Positions 1,979-39,544 of a stretch of 64,000 bases of DNA are shown here, one piece after another. The position numbers and the translations under genes were made by a program. The stretch lies in NCBI GenBank assembly GCA_002269645.1, contig NIVC01001580.1, positions 114,003 to 178,002 on the forward strand, in the 5' to 3' direction. The DNA is from Macrostomum lignano (taxonomy: Eukaryota). The notes under the pieces are model-generated. The model was given only the letters and a program-made list of their open reading frames with translations. It ran no database searches and was not told where the DNA came from. Position 1 is the stretch's first letter. Every line of letters begins with the position of its first letter.

Positions 1979-1982
<4 letters not shown>
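1..1982 (-). mobile_element. Non-LTR retrotransposon (LINE), APE endonuclease + pre-RT region of ORF2, frameshifted; RT lies off the left edge
   Basis: ORF 687-2138(-) has the EEP/APE motifs QFNCNG, LLQETKL, ILGGDFNAH, SPDVT and SDHLPI. Frameshifted continuations (253-690 and 1-250) read ...KEKAELF...PFSIDELRAAVRRLKSGKS.GPDG, the typical linker just before the RT domain in I/Jockey-type ORF2. Confidence 0.92.
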
Positions 1983-2055
<73 letters not shown>

Positions 2056-4059
2056 CTGCTCAACCGGCGATCTCTGTTCCACTGGCCTCGGAGGAGCGGC
2101 ATAGTGCAGCTACTAAAATGGGCTGCAATATGGAGCAATACGAACCGGAAACCGTCAGCTGGATGAATCAGTCAGTGAATCCGTGCGAGTCCATGTACGA
2201 ATTCGCCACTGGAAATCTGCCCCATGAAGACCTGTTCAAGCAAGCTGATGAGACAATGAGAAACCGACTGCACAAGCTGTTGACAAACTCAAGTAATGGA
2301 GTGCAGCAGCAGGACGAAATGATCTCTAATCCGACCAGAATTGCCAGTAGGCTGTACGGTAACTGCCTCAGCTGGTGGAACGGCTCTGACGCAGAAGCGA
2401 TGCGTGGCGCGTTTCTCAGATCCGCTTTTAGCCAGCTGCTCAACAATCTGGAGACCGAATTTAGACATCGAGGCGAAGTTCTTGAGCTCGAGTCTCTGCT
2501 AGCGACTCTTGCCTGTTGTAGAGCCTGTTTCCACCTGTTGGCAGCCAGGTTCAAAGTACTTTCACACCGATTCGCCAATATTAGCGGACCGAAACCCAGA
2601 GCCATGAAGTCGTCAAAGATGATTAAATTTCTGCGATTCCTTCGGAAATGGAACGTAACGAATTCCGTTGAGCTGGAGGCGACGAATATTGTGCAAAAGC
2701 TGGCCTCATTGGATGAACTGTCGAAGTCGGATTCAGTGTAGCTTAAGCTTGAGAGCTGCATACAGATACAGGGCTGGGGATGAAAAAGAAAACCTGATGT
2801 TTACAGCCAAGCAGCTTGAAAACTTTACTAATTGCATTTCGGCTGATACTCGAGTTTCATTTTCAAGGACAAATTTTTTGAAGAAGTGGATTCGAGTTAT
2901 GAAGGTGGCCGTTTGTTACTTGCAGCCTCTGTTCAGATTGCCTATTTAGGTGCATTCATAAATTTAACATCCGATGGTATGCTACGTAATGGGAATTTCA
3001 AGTCAATACTCGAAGCAACCAGCACTCAGATAATTTTGTTTGACTGGCTCTTCAAACTGTCGAAAATGATCCCGAGCTGGTTTATCAAGAATAATCACTA
3101 TTGTCTTGACGCTGCAAAAAAACTGCTCCGAGCAGTGGTATCCACAATGTACAATGTGGCATAATATAACTCAACTGATGCAGCCAATGTGGAGTCTCAG
3201 AATTGGTGGACGGAAAGCGATATTGATGAAGTTAGACAGCTGAGGTACACTAGCAACTTTTTCGAACTTTCGGATCAAGGAAGTTCGGCTGAATTCCTTC
3301 CAGCTCTAAAGAGTATCTACGCGCCTCTTGCTTGAACCTATATGCCGAAAGATTTGAAGCTTTGAAGCTGACGAGGAAAACAACTTTGGCGCTCTGAATT
3401 TGATGAGCCTCGCTTTCCAGCTGAGAATCCGGTACTTTGCGGCCAGAAATACAGTACTGCTTTCTTTATGAGGAATCCTTTTGATGTTGAAGAAAAATAT
3501 GCAAACACAAAACACGGGTTTAGAATTTTCTCCATCCCTCTGCGTCGGCTCACGCCACCAATATTTACATTAATTTTATTTACATCATTAATTGGGCCCG
3601 CGGCTGGTCAACTGCATTCAGCATACCGATTTGGCAAGCTGTGAAAGAAATAAACCAAATAAGTGAAAACAGATCTTTAATTGTAGAGCAGCAGAAACTT
3701 CAAGCCCATTCCAGTTACCAAGCGTTCGTCAAGTGACCCCGCAGCAAATCTGCAACGTGCAGATACTGGTTTAGAGCATTCAATCAGCTGAGCAACTCCA
3801 GCCAACCGCAGATGAACTCTGCGCAGCCGAACCCGCTGACCAAAATCAACTCAATCGAATGTTTTTCACACTGATTGCGCAACTCTTTTACCAAACCGGG
3901 ATGACAGAACAGATTAGCGAGCCTTTCAAACCGTACAATGCTCTCCAAGTCAAGTTTGACAGCGCCATGTTCAACAACAAGGAGTTCGCCAGAGCATTCG
4001 AATGCAGCGAATCGTGCACTTTAAATCGAAAGAATAAATGTACCTATTGGAAGAATTAA
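1959..4059 (+). pseudogene. Intronless neprilysin/peptidase M13-like gene, disrupted by stops and frameshifts
   Basis: N-terminal VNPCESMYEFATG resembles the M13 motif vdPCddFy.yaCg. The internal IFSIPLRRLTPPIF resembles the IPagILqPPFF motif. The C-terminal NNKEFARAFECSESCTLNRKNKCTYW matches the M13 terminus. In-frame stops occur at 2739 and 3162, plus shifts. No HExxH was seen. Confidence 0.75.
1983..2054. repeat. (CTG)24 microsatellite; reads poly-Leu on + and poly-Gln on -
   Basis: Perfect CTG run seen directly at the junction between the LINE and the M13-like gene. Confidence 0.98.
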
Positions 4060-6059: not shown

Positions 6060-8400
6060 TGTCTCGGTGGGCGCCCTGCTGTCTGTTGGTGGGCGCCCTG
6101 TCCCTTGTTGGTGCATGGGCACTCCTGTCTCTTAATAGTGGGTCCCCCTGTCTCTTAATAGTGGGTCCCCCTGTCTCTTAATAGTGGGTCCCCTGTCTCT
6201 TAGTGGGCGCCGCTGTCTCTTAGTGGGCGCCCCTGCCTCTTAGTGGCCGCCCCTGTCTCTTAGTGGGCGCCCCTGTCTCTTAGTGGCCGCCCCTGTCTCT
6301 TAGTGGCCGCCCCTGTCTCTTAGTGGCCGCCCCTGTCTCTTAGTGGCCGCCCCTGTCTCTTAGTGGGCGCCCCTGTCTCTTAGTGGGCGCCCCTGTCTCT
6401 TAGTGGCCGCCCCTGTCTCTTAGTGGGCGCCCCTGTCTCTTAGTGGGCGCCGCTGTCTCTTAGTGGGCGCCCCTGTCTCTTAGTAGTGGGCGCCCCTGTC
6501 CCTTGGGTATGGGCACTCCTGTCTCTTAATAGTGGGTCCCCCTGTCTCTTAATAGTGGGTCCCCTGTCTCTTAGTGGGCGCCCCTGTCTCTTAGTGGGCG
6601 CCCCTGTCTCTTAGTGGGCGCCCCTGTCTCTTAGTGGCCGCCCCTGTCTCTTAGTGGGCGCCCCTGTCTCTTAGTGGCCGCCCCTGTCTCTTAGTGGGCG
6701 CCCCTGTCTCTTAGTGGGCGCCGCTGTCTCTTAGTGGGCGCCCCTGCCTCTTAGTGGGCGCCCCTGCCTCTTAGTGGGCGCCCCTGTCTCTTAGTGGGCG
6801 CCCCTGTCTCTTGGTGGCCGCCCCTGTCTCTTAGTGGGCGCCCCTGTCTCTTAGTGGCCGCCCCTGTCTCTTAGTGGGCGCCCCTGTCTCTTAGTGGGCG
6901 CCCCTGTCTTTTAGTGGCCGCCCCTGTCTCTTAGTGGGCGCCCCTGTCTCTTAGTGGGCGCCGCTGTCTCTTAGTGGGCGCCCCTGCCTCTTAGTGGGCG
7001 CCCCTGCCTCTTAGTGGGCGCCCCTGTCTCTTAGTGGGCGCCCCTGTCTCTTGGTGGCCGCCCCTGTCTCTTAGTGGGCGCCCCTGTCTCTTGGTGGCCG
7101 CCCCTGTCTCTTAGTGGGCGCCCCTGTCTCTTAGTGGGCGCCCCTGTCTCTTGGTGGCCGCCCCTGTCTCTTAGTGGGCGCCCCTATCTCTTAGTGGGCG
7201 CCGCTGTCTCTTAGTGGGCGCCCCTGCCTCTTAGTGGGCGCCCCTGTCTCTTAGTGGGCGCCCCTGTCTCTTAGTGGGCGCCGCTGTCTCTTAGTGGGCG
7301 CCCCTGTCTCTTAGTAGTGGGCGCCCCTGTCCCTTGGTGTATGGGCACTCCTGTCTCTTAATAGTGGGTCCCCCTGTCTCTTAATAGTGGGTCCCCTGTC
7401 TCTTAGTGGGCGCCCCTGTCTCTTAGTGGGCGCCCCTGTCTCTTGGTGGCCGCCCCTGTCTCTTAGTGGGCGCCCCTGTCTCTTAGTGGGCGCCCCTGTC
7501 TCTTAGTGGGCGCCCCTGTCTCTTAGTGGCCGCCCCTGTCTCTTAGTGGGCGCCCCTGTCTCTTAGTGGGCGCCCCTGTCTCTTAGTGGCCGCCCCTGTC
7601 TCTTAGTGGGCGCCCCTGTCTCTTAGTGGGCGCCCCTGTCTCTTAGTGGCCGCCCCTGTCTCTTAGTGGGCGCCCCTGTCTCTTAGTGGGCGCCGCTGTC
7701 TCTTAGTGGGCGCCCCTGTCTCTTAGTAGTGGGCGCCCCTGTCCCTTGGGTATGGGCACTCCTGTCTCTTAGTAGTGGGCGCCCCTGTCCCTTGGTGTAT
7801 GGGCACTCCTGTCTCTTAATAGTGGGTCCCCCTGTCTCTTAATAGTGGGTCCCCCTGTCTCTTAATAGTGGGTCCCCCTGTCTCTTAATAGTGGGTCCCC
7901 CTGTCTCTTAATAGTGGGTCCCCCTGTCTCTTAATAGTGGGTCCCCCTGTCTCTTAATAGAGGGTCCCCCTGTCTCTTAATAGTGGGTCCCCCTGTCTCT
8001 TAATAGAGGGTCCCCCTGTCTCTTAATAGTGGGTCCCCCTGTCTCTTAATAGTGGGTCCCCCTGTCTCTTAATAGTGGGTCCCCCTGTCTTTTAATAGTG
8101 GGTCCCCCTGTCTCTTAGTGGGCGCCCCTGTCTCTTAGTGGCCGCCCCTGTCTCTTAGTGGCCGCCCCTGTCTCTTAGTGGGCGCCCCTGTCTCTTAGTG
8201 GCCGCCCCTGTCTCTTAGTGGGCGCCCCTGTCTCTTAGTGGGCGCCCCTGTCCCTTAGTGGGCGCCCCTGTCTCTTAGTGGGCACCCCTGTCTCTTAGTG
8301 GCTGCCCCTGTCTCTTAGTGGGCGCCCCTGTCTCTTAGTGGCCGCCCCTGTCTCTTAGTGGGCGCCCCTGTCTCTTAGTGGGCGCCGCTGTCTCTTAGTG
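6060..8400. repeat. ~2.3-kb satellite of 20-bp (GTGGGCGCCCCTGTCTCTTA) and 23-bp (GTGGGTCCCCCTGTCTCTTAATA) units with higher-order blocks
   Basis: Tandem units seen directly. The junction block GTCCCTTGG(T)GTATGGGCACTCC recurs near 6100, 6500, 7330, 7745 and 7790. Confidence 0.97.
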
Positions 8401-8641
8401 GACCGTGGTGCCCCTTACTCTGCGTAAGCCACGGTAGTTTAGCTGCCAATGTTTTAAAAGTTCACTACTGAAAGCACGAGTTTTGTAAATACCGTTTCAG
8501 TAGATTATGTACCTTGTGCATGCATTTTAACCAAGTGTAATTCCTAAGCCACTCTGATTCACTCACGAAATAAAAACATCACTTGAATCGCAGGCTGCGC
8601 TGGTCCTACAACTGCATTGTCCTGAGTACCATTTGATCAAT

Positions 8642-11600
8642 ATGACGACTGCAGTCGGTCCGCCTGCAGCAGCGCAGTTACAGAATGAGAAGATCAGAGG
8701 AAGCCTGCTTGTTGAAGCCAAACGAGGCAATTTCGAAGTTTCCATCGAGCACATTAAGCAGGCTTTCAGTTTGGAAAGAGACGAGGAGGGTCGAACTGCG
8801 GCTCACTTTGCCGCCATGAAACCAGGAGGCTTCCGTTTGCTCGAGGAACTGTCTCGCAGTGCAGGACTTTCTTGTCTTGACATGGAAGATGAACACAAAG
8901 CAACTCCGCTTCATTACGCCACCGCAAGCTACTCGCTCGAGCAACTCAAGCAACTCTGGCCGAACGTGCTTCGTTTTTTATGCAGCTACCGGCTCAGAGA
9001 CAAATACGGAAACACACTGGCCCATTGTGCCGCTCGGAACTGCAGCCACGAGGAGGTCATTCTAGAAATTTTACGAGCATCAGACGGCAACCAGCGGACC
9101 AACTGGCCTGTCACAAGAGGATTTATGCTGTGGAAGAATAGCAAAAAACAGACCGTGCTTCACATAGCCATGGAGCACTGCAGTGTAGAGACCGCCAAGA
9201 CTTTTCTAAATCATGCATTGGAATCTGATGAACTCGGTGCTCCTAAAAATCTGGTTGATGACGAGGGCGACACTCTCGCTCACTATGCAGCTAGGAACCA
9301 GCACGTTCATTTGGATGCATATTCAGGGAAACAGCATGACAGCTTTTTCAATTCAGTGGCTCTGGCATGTTGGGGACAAAAGTGCTTGAATTGGAAGAAT
9401 GCCAACGGTCAGTCAGTGATGCAGGCTATCATTAAGTACCTGCCTGACAGCGCAGCAGAACAAATGGCTGACATAGTCTCACTGGAACTGTTTAGACCCG
9501 ATAAGTCCGGTAACACGGTTCTGCATTACACTGGGCTGTATGGGAAGCCCAGGACTTTCATGAAAATTATCAGACGGATGATCATGACGCCAGTTGAAAA
9601 TTTCGCTGAGAAAATAGCAGAAGATGCCAATAACGACGGCCAGACACCGATACATTTTGCTGCGCAGGACAAAGGCGTTATGGACTTTCTCAAAGAAACA
9701 AGCGACATCAACTGGTACTCAAGCAAGCAGGACCGATTCGGCAGGAACATGCTGTTTTACGCATGCATGGGCTGGAATTTCGAGTTTCTTCTCGCTACTG
9801 ATGCACCTAAGAAGGACTTTCGAATTTGTGACTTGGAAGGAAACAGCCTACTTCATGCTGTCATGCTCGGCAGTGGAAATAGCGAGTCAATCAAGAATTT
9901 CAATGCCGCTGTCCAAAAGCTGATCAACAACTTTGGCATCGATCAGAGAGCTGAGAACATTCTGGGACAAAACTGGCTTCAGTGCAGTCGCCTGAATGAA
10001 GACGTTCTTAAAGCCGTGCTATCATCGGCTTCAAAGCATGTCAAAGTGTCACTAAACTTGAACGCTTACAACTCGTCAGGTTTTCATATTCTTCATTTCT
10101 ACTCTGGCAGGTATTCTCTAGAGAACATTGTTAACGTATTTAAGACCCAGTTGAACACAAAGTCGTACAAACTTGTAAGAGAGCAGGTCCTGAAAGGCCC
10201 CAGACTCGGCGCCACCTGCCTACACTTTGCTTGTCAAGCTGCTCACAAGAACAACATTGACTTTCTTTTGAAGAAGCGGCTAAGACTTACAGATTTAGAC
10301 AGCGCAGGGCTCACTTGCATTGACTATGCAGTTGAAGCCGGCAAGCTAGAAAGCCTTTTAGAGGCTCTCGAAATCCGCGTAGTTGACGCGCTTCGTTTTA
10401 CTGACCCAATCCGATGGTCGCTAGAGCTACCTGACTATGACAGCGCATGTCATGTGCTGTCTGTGGCAGACAATGGATCAACGGTTTCCACTCTGGAGCA
10501 GCAGCTTCTTGTGGTATCAAAACAACAGATGCTTTTTGCAGACGCATTTCGCCAAGCTTGGTACCTAGACTCTTCTGTGGCTTTCAGAAGTGCACTCAGA
10601 CTAAATCTTATTAGTCCAGACGCGGAAACAAAGTTCCTCGACTATCTGGTTGAGCAAAGTCGATCAAATCTGCTTCCAGGCTGTCAGCAAACAAATTCGC
10701 AGTCGGAGCTACAAATAGTTGATATCGCCCTAAAAGCTGGCAAGTTCGAGCTTCTACCAGATCTTGTCATCACGAGACAGTTTGACCTGATTCCTGCATG
10801 CCTGCGTCTGATCATACAGCTGCAAAATCAGCGGGGTGAGACTTGCAGCGGATATGAGCAACTCGAAAACCTATATAAAAGAGTAACAAGAGTTCTCGTC
10901 GTTGTCGTCAACCATCTGTTTGAAAATGCTAGCTGGAGCGAGAAACAGATGCTATTCCGGTACATCCGGGGCAACATTTGTGACGACCAAGCTCAAGCTG
11001 GTGGGCCTCGTTTTCCTGGAGCGAACTGTAGTACTTGTGAAATTTACCACACCGCTACGAGTGTCACCATCATGGATCTGATTGAGGAGGCCGACTGCGA
11101 CGAGCTTCTAGCAACAGATTGTCTTCATAGGATGACCAATGATGAATGGCGATCTTCATGCTATGAAAGGCGAGGCCAAGGAACAAGTTCCAGCTCCTGG
11201 ATTTATAGCTTCGGACTTGCAATGTTGTTTTATGCGCGTCTAGCCGTCCATGCAGTGTTCCTACTTTACTTTTCGTGGTACACAACTGACTTTGCGCGGA
11301 CTTTTAACTCATGGACAATTGACGCGATTTTAACAGCCTTTGCTTCGTTCTTCCTAATTCTACAAGTGATCGATGTTGTCATGGCTTTGATGCCTCACAC
11401 CTGCCGCAGATGCGGGACCAGCGCCAGACCAAGAAGACTTGGAAGCTGTCCGCCGTACTGCAGAGACTTCTCTAACTTGATAGACTGGTGTGCTCTTATT
11501 CTACTCTGGTTGGGAATAATTTGGAAGTGGTGCATCTTTCTCAGGCCCACTGATATCACCGTGTACGCTTGTCAAGCCACAATGTCGGCCTCATGTCTGT

Positions 11601-12942
11601 TGTTTGGACTTCGGCTAATTGCTTTCTTGAACTTTTCATCGACAGTAGGACCCATGATAGCTATGATGAAGTGCGTTGTTCTGAAAGACTTTCTGCCTTT
11701 TCTAAGCATCGTTGGAATTATTTTTTACTCATTCGGAGTTTTCTACTTCAACTTGTTGTTTCCTGTGACTACGTCAGTGCAGAGTGAGCTCAGTGCGAAC
11801 ACCTACTGGTGGCGAGTGATTCTACAGATAATCACCCTGCCACTTGACCTGCTGTTTACAAAATTTGACCAGATCAACTTCGACACACCGCGTAGCGGCC
11901 TCGACCAATCTGTAGGATCAGTTGCCAACGCGATCGGGCTCTCCTGGTTTCAAAATCTACTCGTGTTTGTCTTTCTCAGCCTGGTAAACATCGTGATGCT
12001 GTACCTGCTCATTGCCAGGTTCAGTAGCCGCGTCAATGAAATGCGTGACAAAGCGGTCGGGCTGTGGAGGCGGTCGTATTTTGAGCTGCTGCGTGAGCAT
12101 CAGAGACGAGTGGCGCTCTTTACCTGCTGGTCTTGTGGCTGCTTCAGACGGTTGAAAGTTGATTGTGACAATGAGGTACGTCTGTTTGTTGTTGTTTATT
12201 GTAGTCACCACGGGAAAAGACAGTAGAAATATTGTCCTCCCAGTAAAGCTATATGTGGCGGACAAAGATAGTAATCGGTTTGCTTTTTGGACGCCAAAAT
12301 GAGTGCCTGCAGTTAAAAAAATCAGTGTACTAACGACACTGATCCTAAAATATAATGTATGGTTTGTTCGTTTAGGAATTTTTCCCACCTTCCACCTTCC
12401 CTTGGACTTAATTTCTACATGTATTCGCGGTTGCAAGACGTAAGTATGCACTCAGTTCTGCAGCTATGTGCGTATATTCTACACTGCAACAGACAATGAA
12501 AAGTAAGTGACGCAATTATTATAATCCTATGCTCGTAATACAATGTGCATCATTGCAATCCAGATGCACGAAACACACGTAAATCGATAGAACTAACGAA
12601 AATGATTTACCTTGGCGTATTATCAAAGCCTCACATTCGTCATGTAACTCACTCGCAATATAAACCCCTCGCTAGGGCTGGTGGAACAATGAGCATCAGT
12701 ACCCGCTGGAGTACCTGCGTTATCTTGGCTTCCAAGCCAACCAGCTCCGCCACCTGCGCTACCAGCTGGGCAGTCTCTTGGAGCATCAGCCGCGTTGGCG
12801 CTCGGCATTCCAGCCGGCATTGCCGATGACAAGCGGTCAGACTTCCAGAATGCCGCAAGAAAATCGACGATACAATAATGCTCAGAAACCAAAAAGCTGG
12901 CTGCCTGTCGCTACTCAGACTGCAAGAAAGAAAAGGGGTTGA
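8642..12942 (+). CDS. Ankyrin-repeat TRP cation channel, copy 1; exons 8642-12175 and 12676-12942
   Basis: About 14 ankyrin-type motifs (GRTAAHFAA, ATPLHY, GNTLAHCAA, QTVLHIA, GDTLAHYAA, GNTVLHY, GQTPIHFAA, GATCLHFAC and others). Six TM segments with GPMIAMM..DFLPF and LLIARFS, followed by a TRP-box-like WRRSYFELLREH. Donor GAG|gtacgt at 12175 joins acceptor ctag|GGCTGGTGG at 12676 in frame, giving WWNNEHQYPLEYLRYL, homologous to the last exon of copy 2. Confidence 0.9.
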
Positions 12943-13019
12943 AGCGAATCTACGTGGAAAAGATTATTAACGTCCATGACAGGAGATTTTCAATGTCCAT
13001 GTACAAAGAGAGACCTAAG

Positions 13020-13540
13020 TAGAACAAATTATCCACATCCACGTAGAGAAGATTGTTCATATAGATGTAGGGAAGATTGTCAATGTCTAAAAGAGGAGAT
13101 TATCAATATCTTTGAGTTGAGATTATCTATATCCATGGGATGAGACTAATAATGGGAATGAAAATCCATTTGAGATCATGTGAGATTATCCACATCCATG
13201 TAGAGTAGATTACTCAATCTAGGAGAGGAGATTATCCAACCCATGAGAGGAGATTATCTCTAAATATAAAAGAAGATTATCCAGATCGATGAGAGGACAT
13301 TGTCCATATTCATGAGAGGAGATTTATCCATATCCATGAGAGTAGATTATCCCTCTGTCTATAGGGAGAAAAAAGCAATTATTTTTATCCCTGCATAGAA
13401 GATTATCTATTCAGAGGAGATTATCTATTCAGAGGCGATTATCTATTCAGAGGATATTATCTATTTAGAGGAGATAATCTATTCAGAGAAGATTATCTAT
13501 TCATAAGAGATTATCTATTCAGAGGAGATTATCTATTGAG
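13020..13540. repeat. 18-bp minisatellite (AGAGGAGATTATCTATTC, ~8 units at 13397-13538) preceded by a decayed related array
   Basis: Clean units seen at 13397-13538. A degenerate GAGATTATCCATATCCATGAGAG motif recurs from 13020 to 13400. Confidence 0.85.
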
Positions 13541-14354
13541 AGTATCTATGCGGAGAAGATTATCTTACCGCGAATTGGAAGTTCTGCATGACTACGGCGC
13601 CTCCTGTTTTAGTGTCCAAATAAAAGGTTTGCTGCTTCTCTATGGTTTACTCAAAAAATCTTATTTAACTTTCAACTGACTAACGCTGACTTGCAGCGAA
13701 ACTGTCCGACCCATATTCAGAATTATTATTCTCGATTAAAATCTTAAATACAAATTGGAGAAAACATTTAGATTGCTAAAATTCAATGTTAAATAATTTA
13801 GTAAGCGTGGAGAAAATAATAATTCGTCATTGTTTCCTTGCATCAATTCTTTCTGATTTACTGATGAACAATTAGAACGTAAACAAATTGATAATATCAT
13901 TTTCTGGTATCCTAGTTTGTCCAATAATAGCTGAATTTCATCATCGTTATGTATTAAAAAGTCTCAATTTTTGAGAACGATGTTCAAATTAAGCGCAGTC
14001 TTAATACTCGTAAATAGCATTTACGAGCTAAATTCAAGTGCACGTGAAAATAAGGTAGTAAGAAAACAAAAGCCAACAGAAATATATACGAGGAGTGAAA
14101 CTCCTCCTACGGAGGAGAAAGGGGAAGAACTCCCACCGCCAGAATTCCATTACCTGAAATCCATCAGATGAAATCTCATGACTTGAATCCCATCTTCCAA
14201 ATCGTCTCCAAATCCTCTACAAAACCTACAAATACTTGCTGAGCTGCAAGTAGTCTAGGAGGAGTTATGCAACACACAAGCAAACAGACAAACAAACAAA
14301 CAAACATCGCACCACTTTTAGTATTAAGAAGAAGAGCATAACTTTTATTTGTTG

Positions 14355-14397
14355 CCAATGCGTTTCGTCGATCATATACATGTAGACGTCCTCAGGG
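14355..14397 (-). ncRNA. Degenerate minimal hammerhead-ribozyme-like motif (Penelope-type)
   Basis: The minus strand reads CC-CTGAGGA-C-GTC...GAC-GAAA-CGCATT-GG. The CUGANGA and GAAA cores and a 3-bp stem II are present, but stems I and III are imperfect. Confidence 0.35.
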
Positions 14398-15404
14398 TCT
14401 ATTCAATCCAAGTGATCCCAAAACATATCAGTATAAGTCGTATTTATGAACAACAAGCTGTGCAGTCCGAAGACGGGTCAATACAGTCCGGTAAAGTTTC
14501 AAAACGAGCCTAAGTACAGAACGGTGGGAGAGAGATAGAAGACTCACGGCACTGCTCACAGTATTCTGAGCTCACGCTCCACCCCTTGCCACAATACAAT
14601 GACATGAAAGCAAGGTGGAACTATACGCTTCTTTTGGGACACGTGCAATGAATTCTCTTAATACCATCTAGTTAAAGATATGAGTAGTTGAGTAGTTTGT
14701 CTTACCCCTAGAAGTGGTATACACCCGTAGAATAACGACTAAAATACTGGCAAGGTACAGTGCAACTATCTACCGTTGCCAGGTTGCTTAAGTAAAGAAG
14801 AGGCAACGAATGAATGAGTTCTTTGTATCTTTTCAACCTTCTTATAAACCCATAAAAAATTTGAGGCAGTTTTTTTTCTAGCAAGCATTATTAAAGCACA
14901 TTGGTGCTGCTGGTTGCTGTATTGCTTTTTACATTTTCTCCTTTAAATTCGAAGTTAGTTTCCCCCAATAGCAAACTAAAAGTGTACTAGAGGTAAGCAT
15001 ACCGATTTTTTGCATTTGATTATTTTTTATTATTCAATATAACGATTTAAAAAATCTGACTTCGATACCTACAAGCGTTTCTGTGTACTATAACTTATTA
15101 TGGTTCAGTCTGTTTCATGTAGTTTAGACCCGAATTTCAATCATATCTTTTTCTAACAAGCCTTCACTATGCTGCTGGGAATGGAAGGCCTAAAGATGGG
15201 AGACTTTTGTCGTCAAGTAAATAGGGAAGAGTCGGGAAAACTCGATAGAAAAAGACTCGACCTTTATTGCGATCGTAGAAGAACACCAGCTATGTACGAA
15301 TACTGAACATTCTTTTGTAATTGGGTAGATTGCTAAAGTAGATGTGCTTTAAACATACTGGCAGTAGTTCCCGTTTGGGCAATGTTAGTAGACAAAGGGA
15401 TAGA

Positions 15405-15760
15405 TAGAGGCAGGGGGGTTGTGTGCACCCTGGCGCACTTTAAGCGACATAGGCACACAACCGGCGAGAGGCATTACTGCCCATTCCGCCGACTCCCTGA
15501 GCAGGCATACAAGCGCGCGGATACGTACGCAGGCACACACTCACACAGGAGTGTACAGCGGCCCTAACTTTATATTATCGTTAGGCATGTACACTTCACT
15601 GCGCCTTGGGGGGTTGCATGGCTCTCAAGGCCGTTAATTGCACGAGCAGAGCCAAGCCGAGATTCCAATTCAGCCCCAAATTAATGTGACTGCACTTGGA
15701 ATCGAGCCTGGGTCGCTGGCTCACCAGAGCAGCTGCGCTACCGCTGGGCTACGGCCCCCC
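15405..15760 (-). mobile_element. tRNA-derived SINE (356 bp) with 16-bp target-site duplication
   Basis: Exact direct repeats TAGACAAAGGGATAGA at 15389-15404 and 15761-15776. The minus-strand 5' head has A box TAGCCCAGCGG (15741-15751) and B box GGCTCGATTCC (15698-15708). Confidence 0.88.
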
Positions 15761-17064
15761 TAGACAAAGGGATAGACAAAAGGTTTAAAAGTTTCTATAT
15801 CAGTGTCTCTACAGAGCAGTTGGGATTAGGGAAACGCAGACTTCGTCCACACTTACAATTTGGAGGCGAATTACGAGTAATTGAGAGTTTGGGTTCCGCT
15901 GAGAGTAGCGAGGTAATGCATCTCAAGGTAATTTAGGTAAGAGACACAGGACGCCCATCAAAAGTAGAAGTTAATAAGGGATCCTTATTCTAGGTAATAA
16001 CTTAATACCTTGTAAAACTTATTGTATGCTTATTAAAAATTGAACATCTGTCTAATTAATGAATACGCGCAATCTTCAGATTTCTGCTTTCATTCTTTAT
16101 AATTATTAATTAAATATTCCAATATAGAGATTAAACATCCAGACAGTTCGTTTCATAAGAAAGATTTAATAAGGCTGTGATAGTCGGAGAAATATGTAGA
16201 TGTCTGTGAACTATAGATTTTACTGGTTGAAATCACACTATTGCCTTTACAAACACATTAGTAATACGACTAGTTGAAACCTTATTGCTGTCGCCATACA
16301 AGCTGTAGCTATTGCACCTCTTTAGCATCGCTTAGTAGCTGTAGAATAAGCTCAATTTGCATCAGTTCTATTCGTTCCGTACAAAGAGCCGCAGCTGTGA
16401 CAGCAACTCTATAGCAGCTATTTGTTGGGCTCGCTAGATTCAGGCATAGTTTTTGTCATTTTAGTTGCCTGGCCGAAGTGAAATATGATGAATAAAAAAA
16501 GAGAGGATAGCGGCAGACCTTAAATAATGAATGAGTCGCTAAAGAGCACAGAACAAACAACAGACGGAGTAGATAAGATACAAGCCATAGTTACTACGTT
16601 AGGTTTGATAGCGTCGACCGAGTCTGAATTATTCATAATCAATGTATGCTACTGATAAGTAGCAAGTAGAGAGTTCTTTGGCATTAGGAAAATTATGGTT
16701 AAATAATGATATTCATGAGAACTAGGATTCAAATGTAAATTTATTACGCTGTAATTAGAGTAAATACGAGTACACTGAAGTGATTAAGTAGCTCTAACTG
16801 CACTGTAAACACTGTACACCGGTAATTACGAATTCATTTCTCATTAATTATTTTTGATGATTTCGTGAATCTTAGGTAGATTCACTAGCGATTTATTAAT
16901 CAATTTAAAGTCGTGTGCTTTGACTATCTTGAAAATTGTTTATGACAATTCTATACTAACTTAGATTGATGGGTAAGCTTTCAAGCCAACCAACTGTTTT
17001 GTGGTTATCCGATCAATCATTTTGCTGGACAAATTAAAAAAAGGAATGAAACTCAAACTATAAA

Positions 17065-20000
17065 ATGCAAAAACCCATCACAGAAGCGGAAGTTCAGCGC
17101 GAGTGCGACTCAGCTGGTTGGATAATGCAGCAGCCGGAGTCGAGCGTGAGTGTTCAAGGAAAGCACGCGGTCTACTATGACAGCAGCTCTTGTGACGAGA
17201 CCGACGGTGATACGCTGCCACCAGGACTTCCCGACGCGAGGAATTCATATAGAATACAATTTCTGAATTTAGAAGAACCTGTGGTCGAGAACTCAAAATT
17301 ACAAAAGTCTGCAGTCGATTCTCCTACAGAGGAATCGCAAGAAGAAGACGATCCAAATTTGTTACTTCTTAGGTATGCGAAAGCGAAAGAATTCGAGAAA
17401 GCCATACGTCTCTTAGAGAAAGAAAAAGAGAAAAAGGAAAAAGAAAAAGAAAAACAGCCGGAAAAAAAGCTGGAAAAACTGGTGAAAGACTATACAGAAG
17501 AAGGATGCAAGAGAACTGCAGCGCACTACGCCGCAATGACTCCAGAGGGCGGAAAGACGCTTTTAAAAATTATAGAACACTTCAAGCATAAAAAAACTGC
17601 ATGCTGAAAAAAGACAGCCACCAGACAACGCCACTGCATTACTGTATGAGTTGTTTCTCAAAAGAATCTCTGAAAGAGATTATTGATAAGGTGAAACCAG
17701 CCAATTTTTACGAACGAAACTGCGATGGCGATACCGTGTTCCATTTTGCCGCCGTCAACTTAAACCGCCCAGAAGAGAAAAATATTTCGACTGATTACTC
17801 GCGCGATTCAGACAGCAGCGAAGAAAACGCAGAGAAATGTGAAAAAATGAAGGTTAAAAACCAGGTAACCGACTACCAGGAAAGCGTCAACAAGGAAAGT
17901 AGCAGCAAGAAAAGTGATAGCGAGGGGGAAAGTAGCAGCACGGAAAGTGACAGCGAGGAGGAAAGTTTTGGAGAATCTAGCTGCGTTCGCTGGATTCGCG
18001 GCGCGAGTTCCTGTTGCAGCGCTACTGTTACTCCTGATGACGGAAGCAATCAAGCAGCCAACGAAGGGGAACGCAAAGACGGTGATGAATCGCAAGATAA
18101 AACGAATGAAGAACCATCTACACTATTTGGGTTAGTTCTTGCAAAAATACGAGTACTCGTACATACTCGTAAAAAAGATGGCGGAGAAGTGAAAAAAGAG
18201 GCGGAAAGTGCAAAAAAAGTTCTCTTGTTAAAGAACAAAAAGGACCAGACAGTGCTGCATCTGGCTGCAATGCATGCGAGCCCTAAGGAACTCAGTTTTC
18301 TACTGAAAACTGCCTGCAATCTCGACAAAGAATGCCTGGAAGCACAGGACAGAGATGGCTACAACTTTTGTCATTATGCAGTTCAGAACAAGAACCAAAA
18401 TGATAAAATTGTGGACGAACTGTTGTCCGTTCTTGACAAAGTGGACAAAGAACTGGTCTCCACACTGATAGGCGAATACGCCACTACAAATGAAAAATCT
18501 CAAAAAGCTCAAAAAGTTCAAAAAGCTCAAAAAGCTCCGAGACTCACGCTACTCCAGAGAGCAATCGACAGTAAAAGTTGCAAAGATCAGACGGTAGTAA
18601 AAATCTACAAAAAACTGGAAAGTCTTGGAAACGAAGGTAGGATCGGTTTCAAGAAGTACATCGAACAAAGAGACAAGTGTGGAAACACAGCCCTTATTCT
18701 GGCTGCAATGGGTTTCAACAAAGAAGAGAAAAAGTACGAAACAGCGAGTCAGTTATTTCATTGCACCGATAAACATCACTGGTCTCTCCTGAATAACCAA
18801 GGCAAAAGTGCGTTACATCTCGCATATCAAAATTCGCAATTTACGGAACACTTGAGGAAATGGCACACCGACACCTACAATGAACTGATTTCTGAGAGCA
18901 CACTCGACGGAGATGGCAGATCGTGCCTTTTCTACGCGTGCATGGGGTGGAATTTTGATCTTCTGCCCAAAGGAAATGGTTTCAAAATTTTGCCGTGCAC
19001 GGACTTCGACAAAAATACCCTGCTCCACGCACTGTTCTTCTATACCGGAAAACTTGCAGATGACAGCCAAGACGGACCTGACAAACGTGCTGAAAATTTT
19101 ATGGAAGTATTTTTGAATATTGCGTCAGTAACCGAAATAGCAGAGGAAAATGACCTCGGTCAGAACTGCCTACACGCTTCGACCCTAACAGAAGATACTT
19201 TGGAAAAGATATTGAGTAAAGCAGCTTCGGTAGGAAATGAGGGGAAAGACTCAAAGGAAGACAATACATGCCTCGTCGCGGATTTTCGCAGAGAATTAAA
19301 AAAGCTTCTAAAGGCATTAAACGGCTTTCACGCCATCCATTCGTTTGCGAGCAAATACAAACTCAAAAAAGTAGCTCCACTATTGGCCAAACTGTCTGAT
19401 TCGCCAACGGAGTCCCTGCTGCAGCTTACAGTAAGCAGCGGTCCGCTCAAGGGTGCCACCTGTCTGCACTTCGCCTGCGAGACCAACAATGAAGAGAACA
19501 TCAAATGGCTTATGCGTCGAAGAAATTGGCAGGCCCTCGCCGCTGCTACGCATTCTGGGCTGACTGCTCTCGACTTCGCCAAAATCATTAGCCGAATGAA
19601 AGTTGTTGACAAAACTTTTAAACGCCAGGAAGAGAAATCTAAGTTAGAAATTCTGTGTCTAATCGATCCTGTTCACCACGGACTCCAATTGCCGCGCGGA
19701 ACTAAAGCTCGTCAACTTCTTGTCTCCATGCTGGACAAAGCATCCCGCGATAAAGTTGCCAGAGGCAAAGATAGCAAGCAGAGTAAATTCATTGGAAACG
19801 TAAATGTTGAGCTTGGGGAAGGCAATGAAGATGATGAACGCACGGATGAGTGTATCTTGTTCCAGGCGTTAGATCTTGATTCGCCAATCATGTTCCGATG
19901 TGCTCTCCGACTGAAACGGGTTACTCGAGAAGTTGAGGCACGACTTTGGGACTACTTGCAGCACAAAAGCAACAACGGAAAAGAACAGATAGAAGAAAGT

Positions 20001-22842
20001 AAACAGGTAAAAGAAAAAGGAAAGAAACGAGATACCTCATTGGCCAAGTACAAGCAGCTCCCTCGGATCCATTCACCGACCGGATCATCGGAGATGCTGG
20101 TAGTTGACGTCGCTCTGTTCCTCAGAAAACTGAAAATCTTGCCGGACCTTATTCTGACACGGCAGTTTGAGTTGATCCCAGTGACACTAAGCCTGCTATT
20201 GTACCTGAGGTTGGAAATCGCTAATAGCGAAGACACCACCACGCAGAATCAACTGCTGGAACTTAAAGCAAAGCTCCTTCAAATTGCAGTGAATGCTCTT
20301 GAGTGCTTGTACGCTAATATCGATAACGCTAAAGATAAGAAGCTATTAATGAAGTATTTAAACGGAAAAATTGGCAGTTATAAAGAGGAAAAATCTGAAG
20401 AACAGCCTAATGGCAATGATCAAACGCAAAGCCAGCCGTCTGACAACAAAAGAGCAAAAAATCTGGCCAAACGGCAAGACAGCAAAAAAGCTGATCAAGA
20501 GACAAACTCTGAAGAACAGCCTAATGGCAATGATCAAACGCAAAGCCAGCAGTCTGACGACGAGAAAAAAGTCGTACTCGGCCCAAAATTTCCGAGCCGG
20601 TACAAGGAGAACCAACGTTCCATCTACGAAAAGGATACTGAAAAGAACGCTGTGGAGCCAGAAAAGGATACCGTCAATTACTACTCCGTTTACGAAATGG
20701 TCAAGCTGCTCGATTCAAAAGATATTTTTGCAACTGAGTGCATCCACCGACTCCTTAAGAAAAAATGGAACGAAGCACCAAAAGACAACTGCCTTTCTCC
20801 TAAAACTAACTACTCTATAAACTTCTTTGCATTCATTGCCTTTTTAGTGTTTTTTGCGTGGTACTTGATTGATTTCCGGGTGACTTTTGACTGGGCTATT
20901 CCAGACGTGATAATGGCACTCTACCTGGCTTCATTTACGCTGCAAGAATCGTTTGAAATTTACAAGGGCGCTAGCAAACGACACTTTTTGAAAGGCAGCA
21001 AAGCATTTATGTTGCCGCGATATTTTAAGGAACAGCTCAATATGTTTGACTGTGCCGCGATTCTATTCCTGTGGATCGGTCTGGTCTGGAAGTGGATCAT
21101 CTTCTCACACGGCATCTCCTACCCCACTGCCTATTCCTGCCAGATGGTTCTCAGCACCGCATTCTTGCTGTGGGGCTTCCGGTCAGTGTCCTTCCTGAGC
21201 TACTTTGAGACCATCGGACCAGTGATCTCGATGATGCGCAGCCTGCTTCTAAAGGACCTTTTGCCTTTCGCCGCTATCACCATTGTGATATTCTACTCCT
21301 CCAGCGTCTTCTTCTTCAATCTGCTCTTCTCAACTGTAACCGCTACCGCATCCGAGCGGGAGTCAGAAGGCTACGCCACCAGCGTGTTCCTGCAGGTATT
21401 CACCCTGCCGTTCACCCTGTTCCTGGATAATCCTCCAGACTACACGGAATCTGGCGGCGGAACGGACCAAGAAATCGGATCCGTTGGCAACAAGACCGGC
21501 GTCAGTGCCTTCAAAAATTTCTTCGTATTTGTCTTCCTGATTGTCGTCAACATAGTGATGGTGAACCTATTGATCGCTCTGTTCAGCCTCCGCGTGAGCA
21601 CAATGGTCAGCAGGGCCCGCTGCATCTGGAGGCGAAAGTACTTTCACCTGATGCAGGAGTTTCAGCATGCCAGTCCTGTCCCTCCGCCTTTTTCATTTAT
21701 TTACTACATTTTAGCCTTCTCCAGGGAGGTGAATACTCGTAAGTGTAAGGAACGGCAGAAAGCTAAAAGTCAAGAGAAGGTGAGTGAGCGAGATTTTGCA
21801 TCCTATTTTTTTCATATTCAGAAACGGATCCAGGGTTTTTTAGGTGGTCGACTGTTTCATTCTTTAAGGGGTGAATTGGAGTTTCATGTCATGACAGGCT
21901 ATAGAGTTTCGTCAGTGCTACGAGCGTATTTCAGAGCAACAGGTGACCGTTTTTACTGGACTATTTTTCCCGCGGTCAGTTGACCCTTTGATCACAATTG
22001 ATCCACTACTACATAGCTCGTACGTTGCAAGTACTATATTTTAGTACTTTTAATATTTTAAAGTTTAACTCCCCCTACCACTGTACTTCTCGTCAATTTG
22101 TGGACCACAATATGGACGAATTATATTAGGTTTTGAGAACAAGTAGCTGCCCATGGCTTTGTACAGTAGATAAGCTTGGGATTACAGAGGTGGGAAGTGA
22201 AGGAAGAATGATATAAGATTTAAATTTAAATGTAGCTATTCCGAATGCATCATACTTTGGTCGCTGCTCGAAACTTTCGCATTCGAAATTCTGAACGAAT
22301 TACCGTGGATGTAGGCCATTTTAAACCGTTTTAGAGGCCATGTTATCGAAACCACCTGAAAAACCTTCACTCAAAATACTACGGTAAAGCAGAACCCCAG
22401 AGGACGACTAGAAAACCTAGAGCGTTCCAATTTTTTTAAAACGTGCTTTCCTAAACTTCAGGAGTGGTGGAAGTCGGATGGCAGTTCATATCCAGAAGAC
22501 TATCTGAAATTCCTGAGGATCCAAGCCAGCTGCTTCAGCAGAAACCGAGCCAATTTTCTGCAACAGCTGGAAGAGAACCAGCCGGACTTTGATGCTCTGA
22601 AGGCCTTCACACGCAACTCCCTCGCTCAAATGCGCGACAAGCTGGGAGAAACTATAGAAAAGCAGGAAGAGAAGCTGGAAGGGATGAACGAGAGTTTGCG
22701 CTCGGCAATGCTGGACAGGATGTACAAGCAGGAAGAGAAGCTGGAAGTGATAAACGAGAGTTTGCGCTCGGCAATGCTGGACAGGATGAACAGCTTGGAG
22801 AGTAAAGTTGACCAGTTGGTTCAACTAATTTCAAAGAGTTGA
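17065..22842 (+). CDS. Ankyrin-repeat TRP cation channel, copy 2; exons 17065-21779 (1-bp frameshift near 17590) and 22462-22842
   Basis: The 14 ankyrin motifs are colinear with copy 1. TM region reads GPVISMMRSLLLKDLLPF and NLLIALFS, then WRRKYFHLMQEFQHASPVPPPFSFIYY. Donor AAG|gtgagt (21779) joins acceptor ttcag|GAGTGGTGG (22462) in frame to a coiled-coil last exon. ORFs 17065-17607 and 17601-21983 join if the A7 run at 17590-17596 is read as A8. Confidence 0.88.
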
Positions 22843-39199: not shown

Positions 39200-39544
39200 T
39201 TAACAGTATGAATAGCAAGCCATTTTATCAAACATGAATCAAAGTCGCCAGTCTTTAGAGACACAGTGGAGCTGAATTGATGCAGTTCGCTGTATAATGA
39301 GGCGATTGAAAATATTTTGATACGAGTTGCGCTATATTCACATCCATATTTCCCCTCTGGCATTTCCTTTCCCGCACTGTCACTCAATCATTCCCTCCTG
39401 AAAATAGTAAACTTTCACTCTGGCCTTCACCTCTGACATTTCCCCTCCGCCTCTGCCCTTTCATATTTTCATCCATTCCGACACTTTCTCTCTGGAACTT
39501 CTCTTCCGATCCGGCATATTACCTCCGGGACTTCACGTTCAGCA

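What the first reader, a model, noticed from the sequence alone, without database searches (positions are those of the whole stretch)
8642..22842. Tandem pair of hybrid-architecture TRP channels: TRPA-like 14-ankyrin N-terminus on a TRPM-like channel module
Seen: both proteins have 14 colinear ankyrin motifs. They then carry a TRPM-like pre-S1 region (LLQIAVNALECLY; YSVYEMVKLLDSKDIFATECIHRLLKKKW, compare TRPM TCL.LA..A....F.A....Q.LL...W), the S4-S5 GP.i.Mm..DL.pF motif and a TRP box. Copy 2 also has the post-TRP-box PPPF motif and a C-terminal coiled coil. Known: TRPM/TRPS lack ankyrin repeats; TRPA has many ankyrins but no PPPF-type TRP domain; TRPC has only ~4 ankyrins and TRPN ~28. Inference: this is a lineage-specific chimeric or unclassified TRP subfamily in which ankyrins replace the TRPM MHR1-3 region.
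Basis: partly seen in the sequence, partly recalled or inferred. Interest (0 to 1): 0.8.

Follow-up and report, generated by a model that had tools for sequence, protein, structure and literature searches.

The report
Flatworm TRPM channels carrying ankyrin arrays
Two neighbouring genes of the flatworm Macrostomum lignano encode ion channels whose pore half descends from the TRPM ("melastatin") family but whose usual N-terminal nucleotide-sensing domain is replaced by 14 ankyrin repeats, a combination the literature I could search says TRPM-type channels lack and that also occurs in flukes and tapeworms.

Summary
Window 8642-12942 and 17065-22842 (+) hold two colinear, two-exon paralogues (25-35% identical) of Macrostomum lignano. 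Each encodes 14 ankyrin repeats, a helical linker, S1-S6 and a TRP helix. Copy 2 is broken by a one-base A-run indel at 17590-17596, which may be an assembly error.

The channel half matches only TRPMs: a family profile hits TRPM1-8 at E=3e-35 to 1e-20. The linker is a diverged TRPM MHR4, shown by a stepping-stone profile chain (8e-9, then 1e-21) and by a Foldseek search in which 49 of the top 50 PDB hits were TRPMs. No SLOG/MHR1-2 domain is present.

The genes belong to a M. lignano expansion of about 30 clusters. Its sister group is flatworm-wide (Macrostomum, flukes, tapeworms) and has ankyrins + MHR3/4 + TRPM channel. A one-residue S4-S5 insertion, shared only with a flatworm SLOG-bearing TRPM lineage, argues for a secondary SLOG-to-ankyrin swap within flatworm TRPMs.

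I found no published description; Himmel 2020 states that TRPM and TRPS lack ankyrins. Channel function, ligand or stimulus, and the rooted phylogeny remain untested.

The parts
8642..12175 (+). Copy 1, exon 1 (1178 codons): ankyrins, linker, S1-S6, TRP helix. Ends at donor GAG|gtacgt.
   Evidence: ORF; donor site; 100% identical to UniProt M. lignano model P0002
8789..10369 (+). Copy 1 array of 14 ankyrin repeats (aa 50-576)
   Evidence: Pfam Ank families; motif count against shuffles; 14 helix pairs in the AF2 model
10370..11206 (+). Copy 1 helical linker. Its C-terminal ~180 aa (aa ~685-864) is homologous to TRPM MHR4/pre-S1 and includes LPDLVITRQFDLIP (10754-10795) and the pre-S1 motif (11066-11149).
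   Evidence: HMM and hhalign chain; AF2 model plus Foldseek, 49/50 TRPM
11207..12157 (+). Copy 1 channel module: S1-S6, pore helix, TRP helix (aa 856-1172)
   Evidence: PDB matches to TRPM only; helices in the AF2 model
12176..12675 (+). Copy 1 intron (500 nt, gtacgt...ctag, phase 0)
   Evidence: junction used by P0002; 99.8% identical in L001
12676..12942 (+). Copy 1 exon 2 (88 codons + stop; GWWNNEHQYPLEYLRYLGFQA...). Short, Pro/Gly-rich tail.
   Evidence: tblastn with the copy 2 tail
17065..21779 (+). Copy 2, exon 1 (1572 codons once the frameshift is bridged). Ends at donor AAG|gtgagt.
17590..17596 (+). A7 homopolymer causing a -1 frameshift in copy 2. The second haplotype (L001) has A8 and an intact frame.
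17509..19607 (+). Copy 2 array of 14 ankyrin repeats, interrupted between repeats 3 and 4 by an acidic/Ser-rich low-complexity insert (17763-18251)
19608..20807 (+). Copy 2 linker (MHR4-like), with a Q/E/K-rich low-complexity insert at 20382-20669 and the pre-S1 motif at 20682-20768
20808..21692 (+). Copy 2 channel module: S1-S6, TRP box and PPPF
   Evidence: TRPM2 E=1.3e-12 with printed alignment
21780..22461 (+). Copy 2 intron (682 nt, gtgagt...ttcag, phase 0), at the position homologous to the copy 1 intron
22462..22842 (+). Copy 2 exon 2 (126 codons + stop): EWWKSDGSSYPEDYLKFLR..., then a helix-prone tail with an internal 66-nt duplication (22660-22792)

Best explanation
These are two old tandem paralogues of a flatworm-specific branch of the TRPM channel family. 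In this branch the N-terminal SLOG/MHR1-2 nucleotide-binding domain (and here most of MHR3) has been replaced by an ankyrin-repeat array, while the MHR4 linker, the S1-S6 pore module and the TRP helix are kept. Shown: the architecture, the TRPM affinity of the linker and channel, the absence of SLOG, and the family's distribution. That distribution is about 30 clusters at 50% identity in M. lignano, plus a less derived sister group (ankyrins + MHR3/4 + channel) in Macrostomum, trematodes and cestodes. Inferred: each protein assembles as a tetrameric non-selective cation channel gated through the MHR4/TRP-helix interface as in TRPMs. The S2/S3 Ca2+ site (E/Q...D/E in S2, invariant N...D in S3) is retained in copy 2 and most members, so cytosolic Ca2+ probably modulates gating. 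ADP-ribose or nucleotide sensing by SLOG is lost. In its place the 14-repeat ankyrin array supplies the input domain, either as a protein-docking or tethering module or as a compliant element, as in NOMPC and TRPA1. The large species-specific expansion suggests diversification as sensory receptors. Copy 1 is the more derived subunit: Q at the S2 acidic site, Y for the S6 Asn, no PPPF, short tail. It is nevertheless under purifying selection. Copy 2 keeps all the TRPM hallmarks but may be decaying.
For: Single uninterrupted ORFs join the ankyrins to the channel. Pfam finds Ank only, with no SLOG/LSDAT. PDB sequence hits for the channel half are TRPMs. The family profile hits TRPM1-8 and nvTRPM2 at E=3e-35 to 1e-20, and all 60 listed hits are TRPM. 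An exhaustive HMMER search gave 34 family representatives at E<=1e-26, then SLOG-less ankyrin proteins, then canonical TRPMs. All sampled family members are M. lignano. The intermediates carry Ank + PF25508 'TRPM2-like domain' + Ion_trans and come from Opisthorchis, Dicrocoelium, Schistocephalus, Paragonimus, Hymenolepis and Echinostoma. A canonical-only MHR3/4 HMM hits all 12 intermediates at 1e-22 to 1e-5 with Z=1e6, and a canonical+intermediate HMM reaches family members at colinear positions. hhalign gives family vs intermediates Prob 95.8, E=8e-9; intermediates vs canonical Prob 99.4, E=1e-21; family vs canonical score 28.7 against 9-17 in shuffles. A linker-only AF2 model built from a family-only alignment gave 49 of the top 50 Foldseek PDB hits as TRPM. 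In the distance tree the family has 100% support, the intermediates 80%, and the two together 70%, nested among TRPMs when rooted on a choanoflagellate TRPM. The S4-S5 one-residue insertion is in 20/20 family members and 12/12 intermediates, but among SLOG-bearing TRPMs only in the flatworm P0056 lineage. The Ca2+-site and S6/TRP residues are conserved. pN/pS for copy 1 is 0.35 (P=0.02), and 0.19 for its linker+TM (P=0.003).
Against: The tree has no non-TRPM outgroup and no labelled TRPS, so placement inside TRPM rests on a provisional root, 70% bootstrap and one indel. The direct family-to-canonical linker similarity is weak (P=0.005), and individual Foldseek E-values are 0.1-2. There is no expression, localisation or electrophysiology. 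The selectivity filter has diverged from FG(Q/E) to F(T/G)xF(D/E), so permeation cannot be assumed. Copy 2 has a frameshift in this assembly and a mobile-element insertion in the other haplotype, and its pN/pS is 0.71 (P=0.13). The coiled coil is not confirmed.
Confidence: 0.8

Rival explanations
1. Relic rather than swap. The ankyrin + MHR3/4 + channel form is a surviving pre-SLOG stem lineage of TRPM/TRPS that kept the ancestral ankyrin array of group-1 TRPs and was lost everywhere except flatworms.
For: Himmel 2020 infers that ankyrins were lost before the TRPM-TRPS split. MHR3 and MHR4 are reported to contain degenerate ankyrin repeats, so a continuous ankyrin-to-MHR3 array is conceivable. 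The backbone of my tree is unresolved and its root is provisional.
Against: All identified members are flatworms. SLOG-bearing TRPMs already exist in choanoflagellates (P0072), so the relic would need many independent losses. The S4-S5 insertion is shared with a SLOG-bearing flatworm TRPM lineage but not with other TRPMs.
Confidence: 0.1
2. It is a highly divergent TRPN (NOMPC-type), TRPA or TRPC channel whose pore region merely resembles TRPM.
For: The whole-model Foldseek top hits are NOMPC (2e-20) and Drosophila TRPA1 (2e-15). NOMPC is the best sequence hit of the ankyrin region. Copy 2's TM detects NOMPC at 2.9e-6.
Against: Those hits are driven by the number of ankyrin repeats. TRPA1 never aligns to the channel half. 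Copy 1's channel half finds no NOMPC, TRPC or TRPA even at E<=10. The profile search is TRPM-only down to 1e-20. The linker model finds TRPMs and no NOMPC or TRPC linker domains in its top 50. The intermediates pass the Pfam gathering threshold for the TRPM2-like domain.
Confidence: 0.04
3. The genes are pseudogenes or assembly/annotation artefacts (a fused ankyrin gene and channel gene) with no function.
For: Copy 2 has a frameshift here and a Maverick/Polinton-like insertion in the S4-S5 linker in the other haplotype, and its pN/pS is 0.71. L001's copy 1 has its own frame change. The region is rich in repeats and retroelements.
Against: Copy 1 is an uninterrupted 1178-codon ORF with canonical splice sites, and pN/pS is 0.19-0.35. 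Apart from one homopolymer base, copy 2 is open for 1698 codons. The same architecture recurs in about 30 paralogue clusters and in other flatworm genera, with invariant pore, S3 and TRP residues. One isolated indel per haplotype, each in a different gene, is typical of long-read homopolymer error.
Confidence: 0.06

Closest known systems
TRPM channels (TRPM2 is the closest solved structure, e.g. 6drj, 6mix)
   Same: S1-S6, pore helix, S6 motif N-x-x-M-x-N-L-L-I-A-x-F, TRP box W-(K/R), TRP box 2 PPPF (copy 2 and the family consensus), the S2/S3 Ca2+-site residues, and an MHR4-type helical linker with the pre-S1 motif ...F.(A/S)....(Q/H).LL...W
   Different: No SLOG/MHR1-2, and MHR3 largely gone. 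Fourteen ankyrin repeats sit in their place. No NUDT9H or kinase domain. Filter FG(Q/E) is changed to F(T/G)xF(D/E). There is a one-residue insertion in the S4-S5 linker.
Flatworm ankyrin + MHR3/4 + TRPM-channel proteins (e.g. M. lignano A0A267ES81/P0045, Opisthorchis viverrini OON13731/P0131, Schistocephalus solidus A0A0V0J4K6/P0173); uncharacterised database entries
   Same: N-terminal ankyrins, no SLOG, TRPM-type channel with the same S4-S5 insertion. Sister clade in the TM tree.
   Different: They have fewer ankyrins detected, keep a recognisable MHR3/4 (Pfam PF25508 at threshold), have a longer MHR4-to-S1 spacer, and are found across Neodermata. The window family is a M. lignano-specific, more derived expansion.
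NOMPC (TRPN) and TRPA1
   Same: Overall build: a long N-terminal ankyrin array on a six-TM TRP channel. They are the best whole-model structural matches.
   Different: The channel and linker sequences are not TRPN- or TRPA-like. Repeat number is 14 against 29 in NOMPC and 16-17 in TRPA1. TRPA1 lacks the PPPF-type TRP box 2.
Choanoflagellate 'TRPW' channels (bioRxiv 10.64898/2026.06.15.732245)
   Same: A precedent for a TRPM-related pore module whose N-terminal SLOG is replaced by a different repeat domain in a lineage-specific expansion
   Different: That case has WD40 propellers, not ankyrins; it occurs in choanoflagellates, not animals; and it is an independent event.
TRPS (soromelastatin; ced-11)
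   Same: Sister family of TRPM with a similar pore
   Different: TRPS has SLOG and Nudix, no ankyrins, and a divergent TRP box 2. The window family has ankyrins and a TRPM-type PPP box.

Membership tests
TRPM | Six-TM pore module with its closest sequence similarity to TRPMs | tested here: met
   TRPM2 1.3e-12 (copy 2) and 1.1e-8 (copy 1); family profile 3e-35 to 1e-20, with all 60 listed hits TRPM
TRPM | TRP helix with TRP box 1 (W-K/R) and proline TRP box 2 (PPPF) | tested here: met
   Copy 2 has IWRRKYF...PVPPPF. Family consensus is W-R...LPPPLSF. Copy 1 keeps box 1 but has lost box 2 (RRVALF).
TRPM | N-terminal MHR1/2 (SLOG/LSDAT) domain | tested here: not met
   No Pfam LSDAT or other non-Ank hit at E<=1. 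A phmmer search with TRPM2 MHR1/2 finds 25 canonical TRPMs but no family or intermediate member.
TRPM | MHR3/MHR4 helical region preceding S1 | tested here: met
   MHR4 is met via the stepping-stone HMM and hhalign chain and by fold search, 49/50 TRPM. MHR3 is not detectable in the window family but is present in the intermediates.
TRPM | Absence of canonical ankyrin repeats | tested here: not met
   14 repeats in each copy
TRPM | C-terminal tetramerising coiled coil | tested here: inconclusive
   No Pfam TRPM_tetra hit. The crude heptad test was not significant. Copy 2's tail is helix-prone and copy 1's tail is Pro/Gly-rich.
TRPM | Phylogenetic placement of the TM region inside the TRPM clade | tested here: inconclusive
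   NJ/Scoredist tree: nested among TRPMs when rooted on a choanoflagellate TRPM, with 70% support for family + intermediates. S4-S5 indel shared with a flatworm SLOG-TRPM. No non-TRPM or TRPS outgroup was available.
TRPA | Long N-terminal ankyrin array (14-18 repeats) | tested here: met
   14 repeats, but the repeats are generic by sequence
TRPA | TRPA-type transmembrane/pore sequence | tested here: not met
   TRPA1 aligns only to the ankyrin part and never to the channel half
TRPN (NOMPC) | About 29 ankyrin repeats and a TRPN-type linker and pore | tested here: not met
   14 repeats. NOMPC TM hit is 2.9e-6 against TRPM2 1.3e-12 for copy 2, and there is none for copy 1. NOMPC is absent from the top 50 of the linker fold search.
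TRPC | Four ankyrin repeats + LHD + EWKFAR TRP box | tested here: not met
   No TRPC structure among the listed sequence hits or the top 50 fold hits of the linker. 14 repeats.
TRPS | SLOG + Nudix, no ankyrins, divergent TRP box 2 (Himmel 2020) | tested here: not met
   No SLOG or Nudix; ankyrins present; TRPM-type PPP box. Tree placement relative to TRPS is not testable with these tools because no labelled TRPS sequences were available.

The most novel reading that the evidence does not exclude
The flatworm ankyrin + MHR3/4 + channel proteins are not a secondary swap but the last survivors of the ankyrin-bearing proto-TRPM that existed before SLOG was fused on. If so, the N-terminal ankyrin array is continuous in origin with the degenerate ankyrin repeats buried in MHR3/MHR4. 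That would give a living intermediate for how TRPM/TRPS lost their ankyrins.
Probability: 0.1. Interest if true: 0.85.

Novelty: new variant of a known kind. Interest (0 to 1): 0.6.

Why it matters
Reviews and the main TRPM/TRPS phylogeny state that TRPM and TRPS are the group-1 TRP families without ankyrin repeats. Here a whole clade with a TRPM-derived pore and MHR4 carries long ankyrin arrays instead of the SLOG ligand-binding domain.

This matters in three ways:
- It is a natural domain-swap experiment on how N-terminal sensor modules couple through MHR4 and the TRP helix to a TRPM gate.
- It adds an uncharacterised TRPM-type channel class to flukes and tapeworms, organisms in which TRPM channels are the targets of praziquantel and meclonazepam.
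- In M. lignano, a transgenic model flatworm, it forms a repertoire of about 30 clusters that may be a lineage-specific sensory receptor family.

It also shows that TRP surveys which classify channels by N-terminal domain will misfile these proteins.

Tried and rejected
- Searching the named protein database with full-length copy 2 was swamped by low-complexity and ankyrin words and gave one hit. I repeated it with the channel half only.
I redid it with exon-exact references.
- I tried to recover the NOMPC channel segment from a printed PDB alignment, using a composite ankyrin + channel query, so as to root the tree. NOMPC did not reach the list and I abandoned this.
- A crude heptad-contrast test for the coiled coil was not significant, with 42 of 300 shuffles scoring as high.
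- The iterative HMM search on the small local set could drift, so I replaced it with non-circular profiles that excluded the family, and with hhalign plus column-shuffle controls.
- The profile search of the named database with the intermediates returned only 5 proteins because of the word index, so the taxonomic breadth I report is a lower bound. Schistosoma and planarians were neither found nor excluded.
- Literature searches found no description of ankyrin-bearing TRPMs. Subscription journals are not covered.
- I considered and rejected a fusion artefact (single ORFs, recurrent architecture), TRPA, TRPN or TRPC membership, and TRPS membership.

Full report
**What is there**

The window is Macrostomum lignano DNA. 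Copy 1 is 100% identical to a UniProt M. lignano entry (P0002). A second M. lignano contig (NIVC01002175.1 = L001) is about 97% identical over the locus and carries the same tandem pair.

On the + strand there are two long ORFs, 8633-12226 and 17601-21983, plus an ORF at 17065-17607 that belongs with the second.

Gene models:
- Copy 1 is 8642-12175 (donor GAG|gtacgt) + 12676-12942 (acceptor ctag|GGC). It encodes 1266 aa. The independent model P0002 uses exactly this junction.
- Copy 2 is 17065-21779 (donor AAG|gtgagt) + 22462-22842 (acceptor ttcag|GAG). It encodes 1698 aa once a single-base problem is bridged.
- That problem is at 17590-17596, where the window has seven A's. L001 and its protein (FKHKKNCMLKKD) have eight.
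- The intron is phase 0 and sits at the homologous position in both genes (...DCDNE|GWWN, ...SQEK|EWWK). This is a duplicated two-exon gene.
- The copies are colinear but only 25-28% identical in the ankyrin half and 35% in the channel half, so the duplication is old.

**Checking the observation**

- Pfam finds only ankyrin families: Ank_2 at 5e-27 and 2e-18.
- Ankyrin core motifs number 14-15 in each N-terminal half, against about 3 expected and at most 8-9 in 500 shuffles.
- An AlphaFold2 model of copy 1 exon 1 (24-sequence family alignment, mean pLDDT 73, ankyrin region mostly 80-93) has exactly 14 helix-turn-helix pairs between residues 53 and 576. After them come a helical linker, six TM helices with a pore helix, and a long TRP helix.

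The additions are the second exons, the copy 2 frameshift, and two low-complexity inserts in copy 2 (17763-18251 and 20382-20669).

**The channel half is TRPM**

- Copy 2 against all PDB sequences gives TRPM2 at 1.3e-12, from S1 through the PPPF box. The other TRPMs score 1e-8 to 1e-6, Chlamydomonas TRP1 1e-6, NOMPC 3e-6 and Nanchung 0.016.
- Copy 1's post-ankyrin half finds TRPMs, Chlamydomonas TRP1 and a few sub-threshold unrelated proteins, but no other TRP family, even at E<=10.
- A profile of 13 family sequences hits TRPM1-8 and Nematostella TRPM2 at 3e-35 to 1e-20. All 60 listed hits are TRPMs.
- TRPA1 aligns only to the ankyrin part.

Residue level:
- The S3 N...D pair of the TRPM/TRPC-type Ca2+ site is invariant.
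- The S2 acidic position is kept in copy 2 and most members. Copy 1 has Q.
- The S6 motif N-I-V-M-x-N-L-L-I-A-x-F and the W-R of the TRP box are invariant or nearly so.
- The family consensus keeps LPPPLSF.
- The filter FG(Q/E) has become F(T/G)xF(D/E).

**Relatives**

An exhaustive HMMER search of 1.84 billion representatives with copy 1's post-ankyrin part gave 116 hits, with a sharp break in scores.

- 34 representatives score E<=1e-26. Every one I could name is M. lignano, and the full-length ones have 10-25 ankyrin motifs.
- Next comes a group without SLOG, which I call the intermediates. It includes more M. lignano proteins, Opisthorchis 'ankyrin repeat protein', Dicrocoelium and Schistocephalus. 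Paragonimus, Hymenolepis and Echinostoma were added by a profile search.
- Several intermediates show Ank + PF25508 'TRPM2-like domain' (just above the gathering score) + Ion_trans.
- Only after these come canonical SLOG-bearing TRPMs from vertebrates, molluscs, flatworms and choanoflagellates.

**The linker is a diverged MHR4**

- A profile built only from canonical TRPM MHR3/4 detects all 12 intermediates at 1e-22 to 1e-5 (Z=1e6) but no family member.
- A profile of canonical TRPMs plus intermediates, with no family member in it, reaches family members at colinear positions just before S1. P0006 scores 1e-5, three others score 2e-3 to 9e-3, and copy 1 alone is sub-threshold.
- hhalign gives family vs intermediates Prob 95.8%, E=8e-9 over 191 columns.
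- hhalign gives intermediates vs canonical Prob 99.4%, E=1e-21.
- hhalign gives family vs canonical score 28.7 (P=0.005), against 9-17 in 20 column-shuffled controls.
- Independently, an AF2 model of copy 1 residues 576-852 was made from a family-only alignment (pLDDT 72.5). It returned TRPM1/2/3/4/5/8 and chanzyme structures as 49 of the top 50 Foldseek hits in 350,542 PDB chains. Probabilities reached 1.0 and TMq was 0.35-0.49, although individual E-values were only 0.1-2. No TRPC, TRPN, TRPA or TRPV appeared.
- No SLOG is present.

So in the intermediates ankyrins replace MHR1/2. In the window family they replace MHR1/2 and most of MHR3.

**Origin**

A Scoredist/NJ tree of 80 channel modules (265 columns, 100 bootstraps) gives these supports:
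- the family is monophyletic at 100%;
- the intermediates group at 80%, with a parasite subclade and a M. lignano subclade at 100% each;
- the two together group at 70%.

Rooted on a choanoflagellate TRPM, this clade sits among canonical TRPMs, but the backbone is unresolved.

A rare change supports a flatworm TRPM origin. A one-residue insertion in the S4-S5 motif (GP...M..x-KD(L/F)xPF) is present in 20/20 family members and 12/12 intermediates. Among SLOG-bearing TRPMs it is found only in the Clonorchis P0056 lineage, together with its close relatives P0049 from Dicrocoelium and P0101 from M. lignano, neither of which has a detected SLOG. It is absent from the 22 other canonical TRPMs.

I could not add TRPC, TRPN, TRPA or TRPS outgroups, so the rooted placement remains provisional.

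**Whole-protein resemblance**

The full model's best PDB matches are NOMPC (2e-20) and Drosophila TRPA1 (2e-15). Next come ankyrin proteins, then TRPMs at about 4e-8. By sequence the ankyrin array is generic: NOMPC, DARPins and TRPA1 score roughly in proportion to repeat number. The protein is built like NOMPC or TRPA1 but its channel half descends from TRPM.

**Are the genes alive?**

- Between the window and L001, copy 1 has pN/pS 0.35 (P=0.02), and its linker + TM has 0.19 (P=0.003).
- Copy 2 has 0.71 (P=0.13).
- Copy 2 has the A-run frameshift here.
- In L001 copy 2 is open from the first ankyrin to '...SYFETIGP'. It is then cut in the S4-S5 linker by an insertion of at least 8.8 kb. That insertion encodes an rve integrase, an adenain-like protease and a P-loop ATPase, so it is Maverick/Polinton-like.
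- L001's copy 1 has its own frame change near residue 235, which the window lacks.

Copy 1 is therefore most likely functional. Copy 2 is either functional with an assembly error or a very recent casualty.

**Literature**

- Himmel et al. [quoted passage not shown] Flatworms other than acoels are not mentioned.
- The 2026 MBE TRPM survey does not mention flatworms.
- Flatworm TRP papers do not describe ankyrin-bearing TRPMs.
- The closest precedent is the choanoflagellate TRPW clade, which has WD40 in place of SLOG.
- Database names are only 'ANK_REP_REGION / Ion transport / TRPM-like domain-containing protein' or 'hypothetical'.

**Verdict**

This is a derived, flatworm-specific TRPM branch, a new variant of a known kind. 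The ankyrins are not shown to be TRPA-derived. Function as a Ca2+-modulated cation channel with an ankyrin input domain is inferred, not shown.

Noticed in passing
window 6136-8401: A 2.3-kb satellite of a 20-bp unit (TAGTGGGCGCCCCTGTCTCT, about 109 copies, 89% matches, GC-rich) ends 240 bp upstream of copy 1's ATG. The start of L001 carries the same array.
   Followed up: partly
L001 13863-22646 (homologous to the point after window 21222): In the second haplotype, copy 2 is interrupted inside the S4-S5 linker (after ...SYFETIGP) by an insertion of at least 8.8 kb. It encodes an rve-type integrase, an adenovirus-type cysteine protease (Peptidase_C5), a P-loop ATPase, a PC4-like protein and unassigned ORFs. 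It looks like a Maverick/Polinton-type element. I did not reconstruct it.
   Followed up: partly
L001 about 1749-1752 (copy 1 homologue, near aa 235): The L001 version of copy 1 changes reading frame near residue 235, whereas the window's copy 1 is intact. With the copy 2 A-run in the window, each assembly has one isolated indel in a different gene, which suggests long-read indel errors.
   Followed up: partly
window 17763-18251 and 17893-17966: Copy 2 has an acidic/Ser-rich low-complexity insert of about 160 aa between ankyrin repeats 3 and 4, with a 33-nt tandem repeat. The insert is longer in L001/P0001, where a block is duplicated, so it is length-polymorphic.
   Followed up: no
window 20382-20669: Copy 2's MHR4-like linker carries a Q/E/K-rich insert of about 95 aa with an internal duplication (EEQPNGNDQTQSQ twice). 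Copy 1 lacks it.
   Followed up: no
window 22660-22792: The last exon of copy 2 contains a 66-nt tandem duplication, 95% identical, giving two 22-aa units (KQEEKLE(G/V)(M/I)NESLRSAMLDRM).
   Followed up: no
P0002 (UniProt model of copy 1) against window 11220-11560: The public gene model of copy 1 skips about 110 residues covering S1-S3 (...SFGLAM|PTDITVYAC...). This is either a mis-prediction or an alternative splice that would destroy the channel.
   Followed up: no
window 687-2138 (-): ORF with an endonuclease/reverse-transcriptase-type domain (Exo_endo_phos_2, 6e-14), so a LINE-type retroelement fragment. It has a long CAG/polyQ run.
   Followed up: partly
window 47777-51660 (+): LTR-retrotransposon-like gag-pol. 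RVT_1, RT_RNaseH, Integrase_H2C2 and rve are spread over three consecutive ORFs.
   Followed up: partly
window 33944-35099 and 42516-43700 (+): Two copies of a gene for a secreted-looking protein share an N-terminus (...SAALALLLCSLAAGQVSQCAPADSPRLRF...) and have no Pfam match. Large tandem-repeat arrays lie between them, at 39469-41791 and 30394-31311.
   Followed up: no
window 55758-56273 (-) and 59819-63423 (-): A WSC-domain ORF, and a run of Cys-rich ORFs (TIL, F5/8 type C) with Thr-rich mucin-like stretches. This is probably a multi-exon secreted or adhesive protein gene.
   Followed up: partly
P0046, P0062, P0083, P0041, P0094 (Logan or unnamed sources): Several sequences at key tree positions come from unnamed read-archive assemblies. 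P0046 is sister to the window family, and P0062 is sister to the parasite subclade. Their organisms could show whether the architecture exists outside the named flatworm genera.
   Followed up: no
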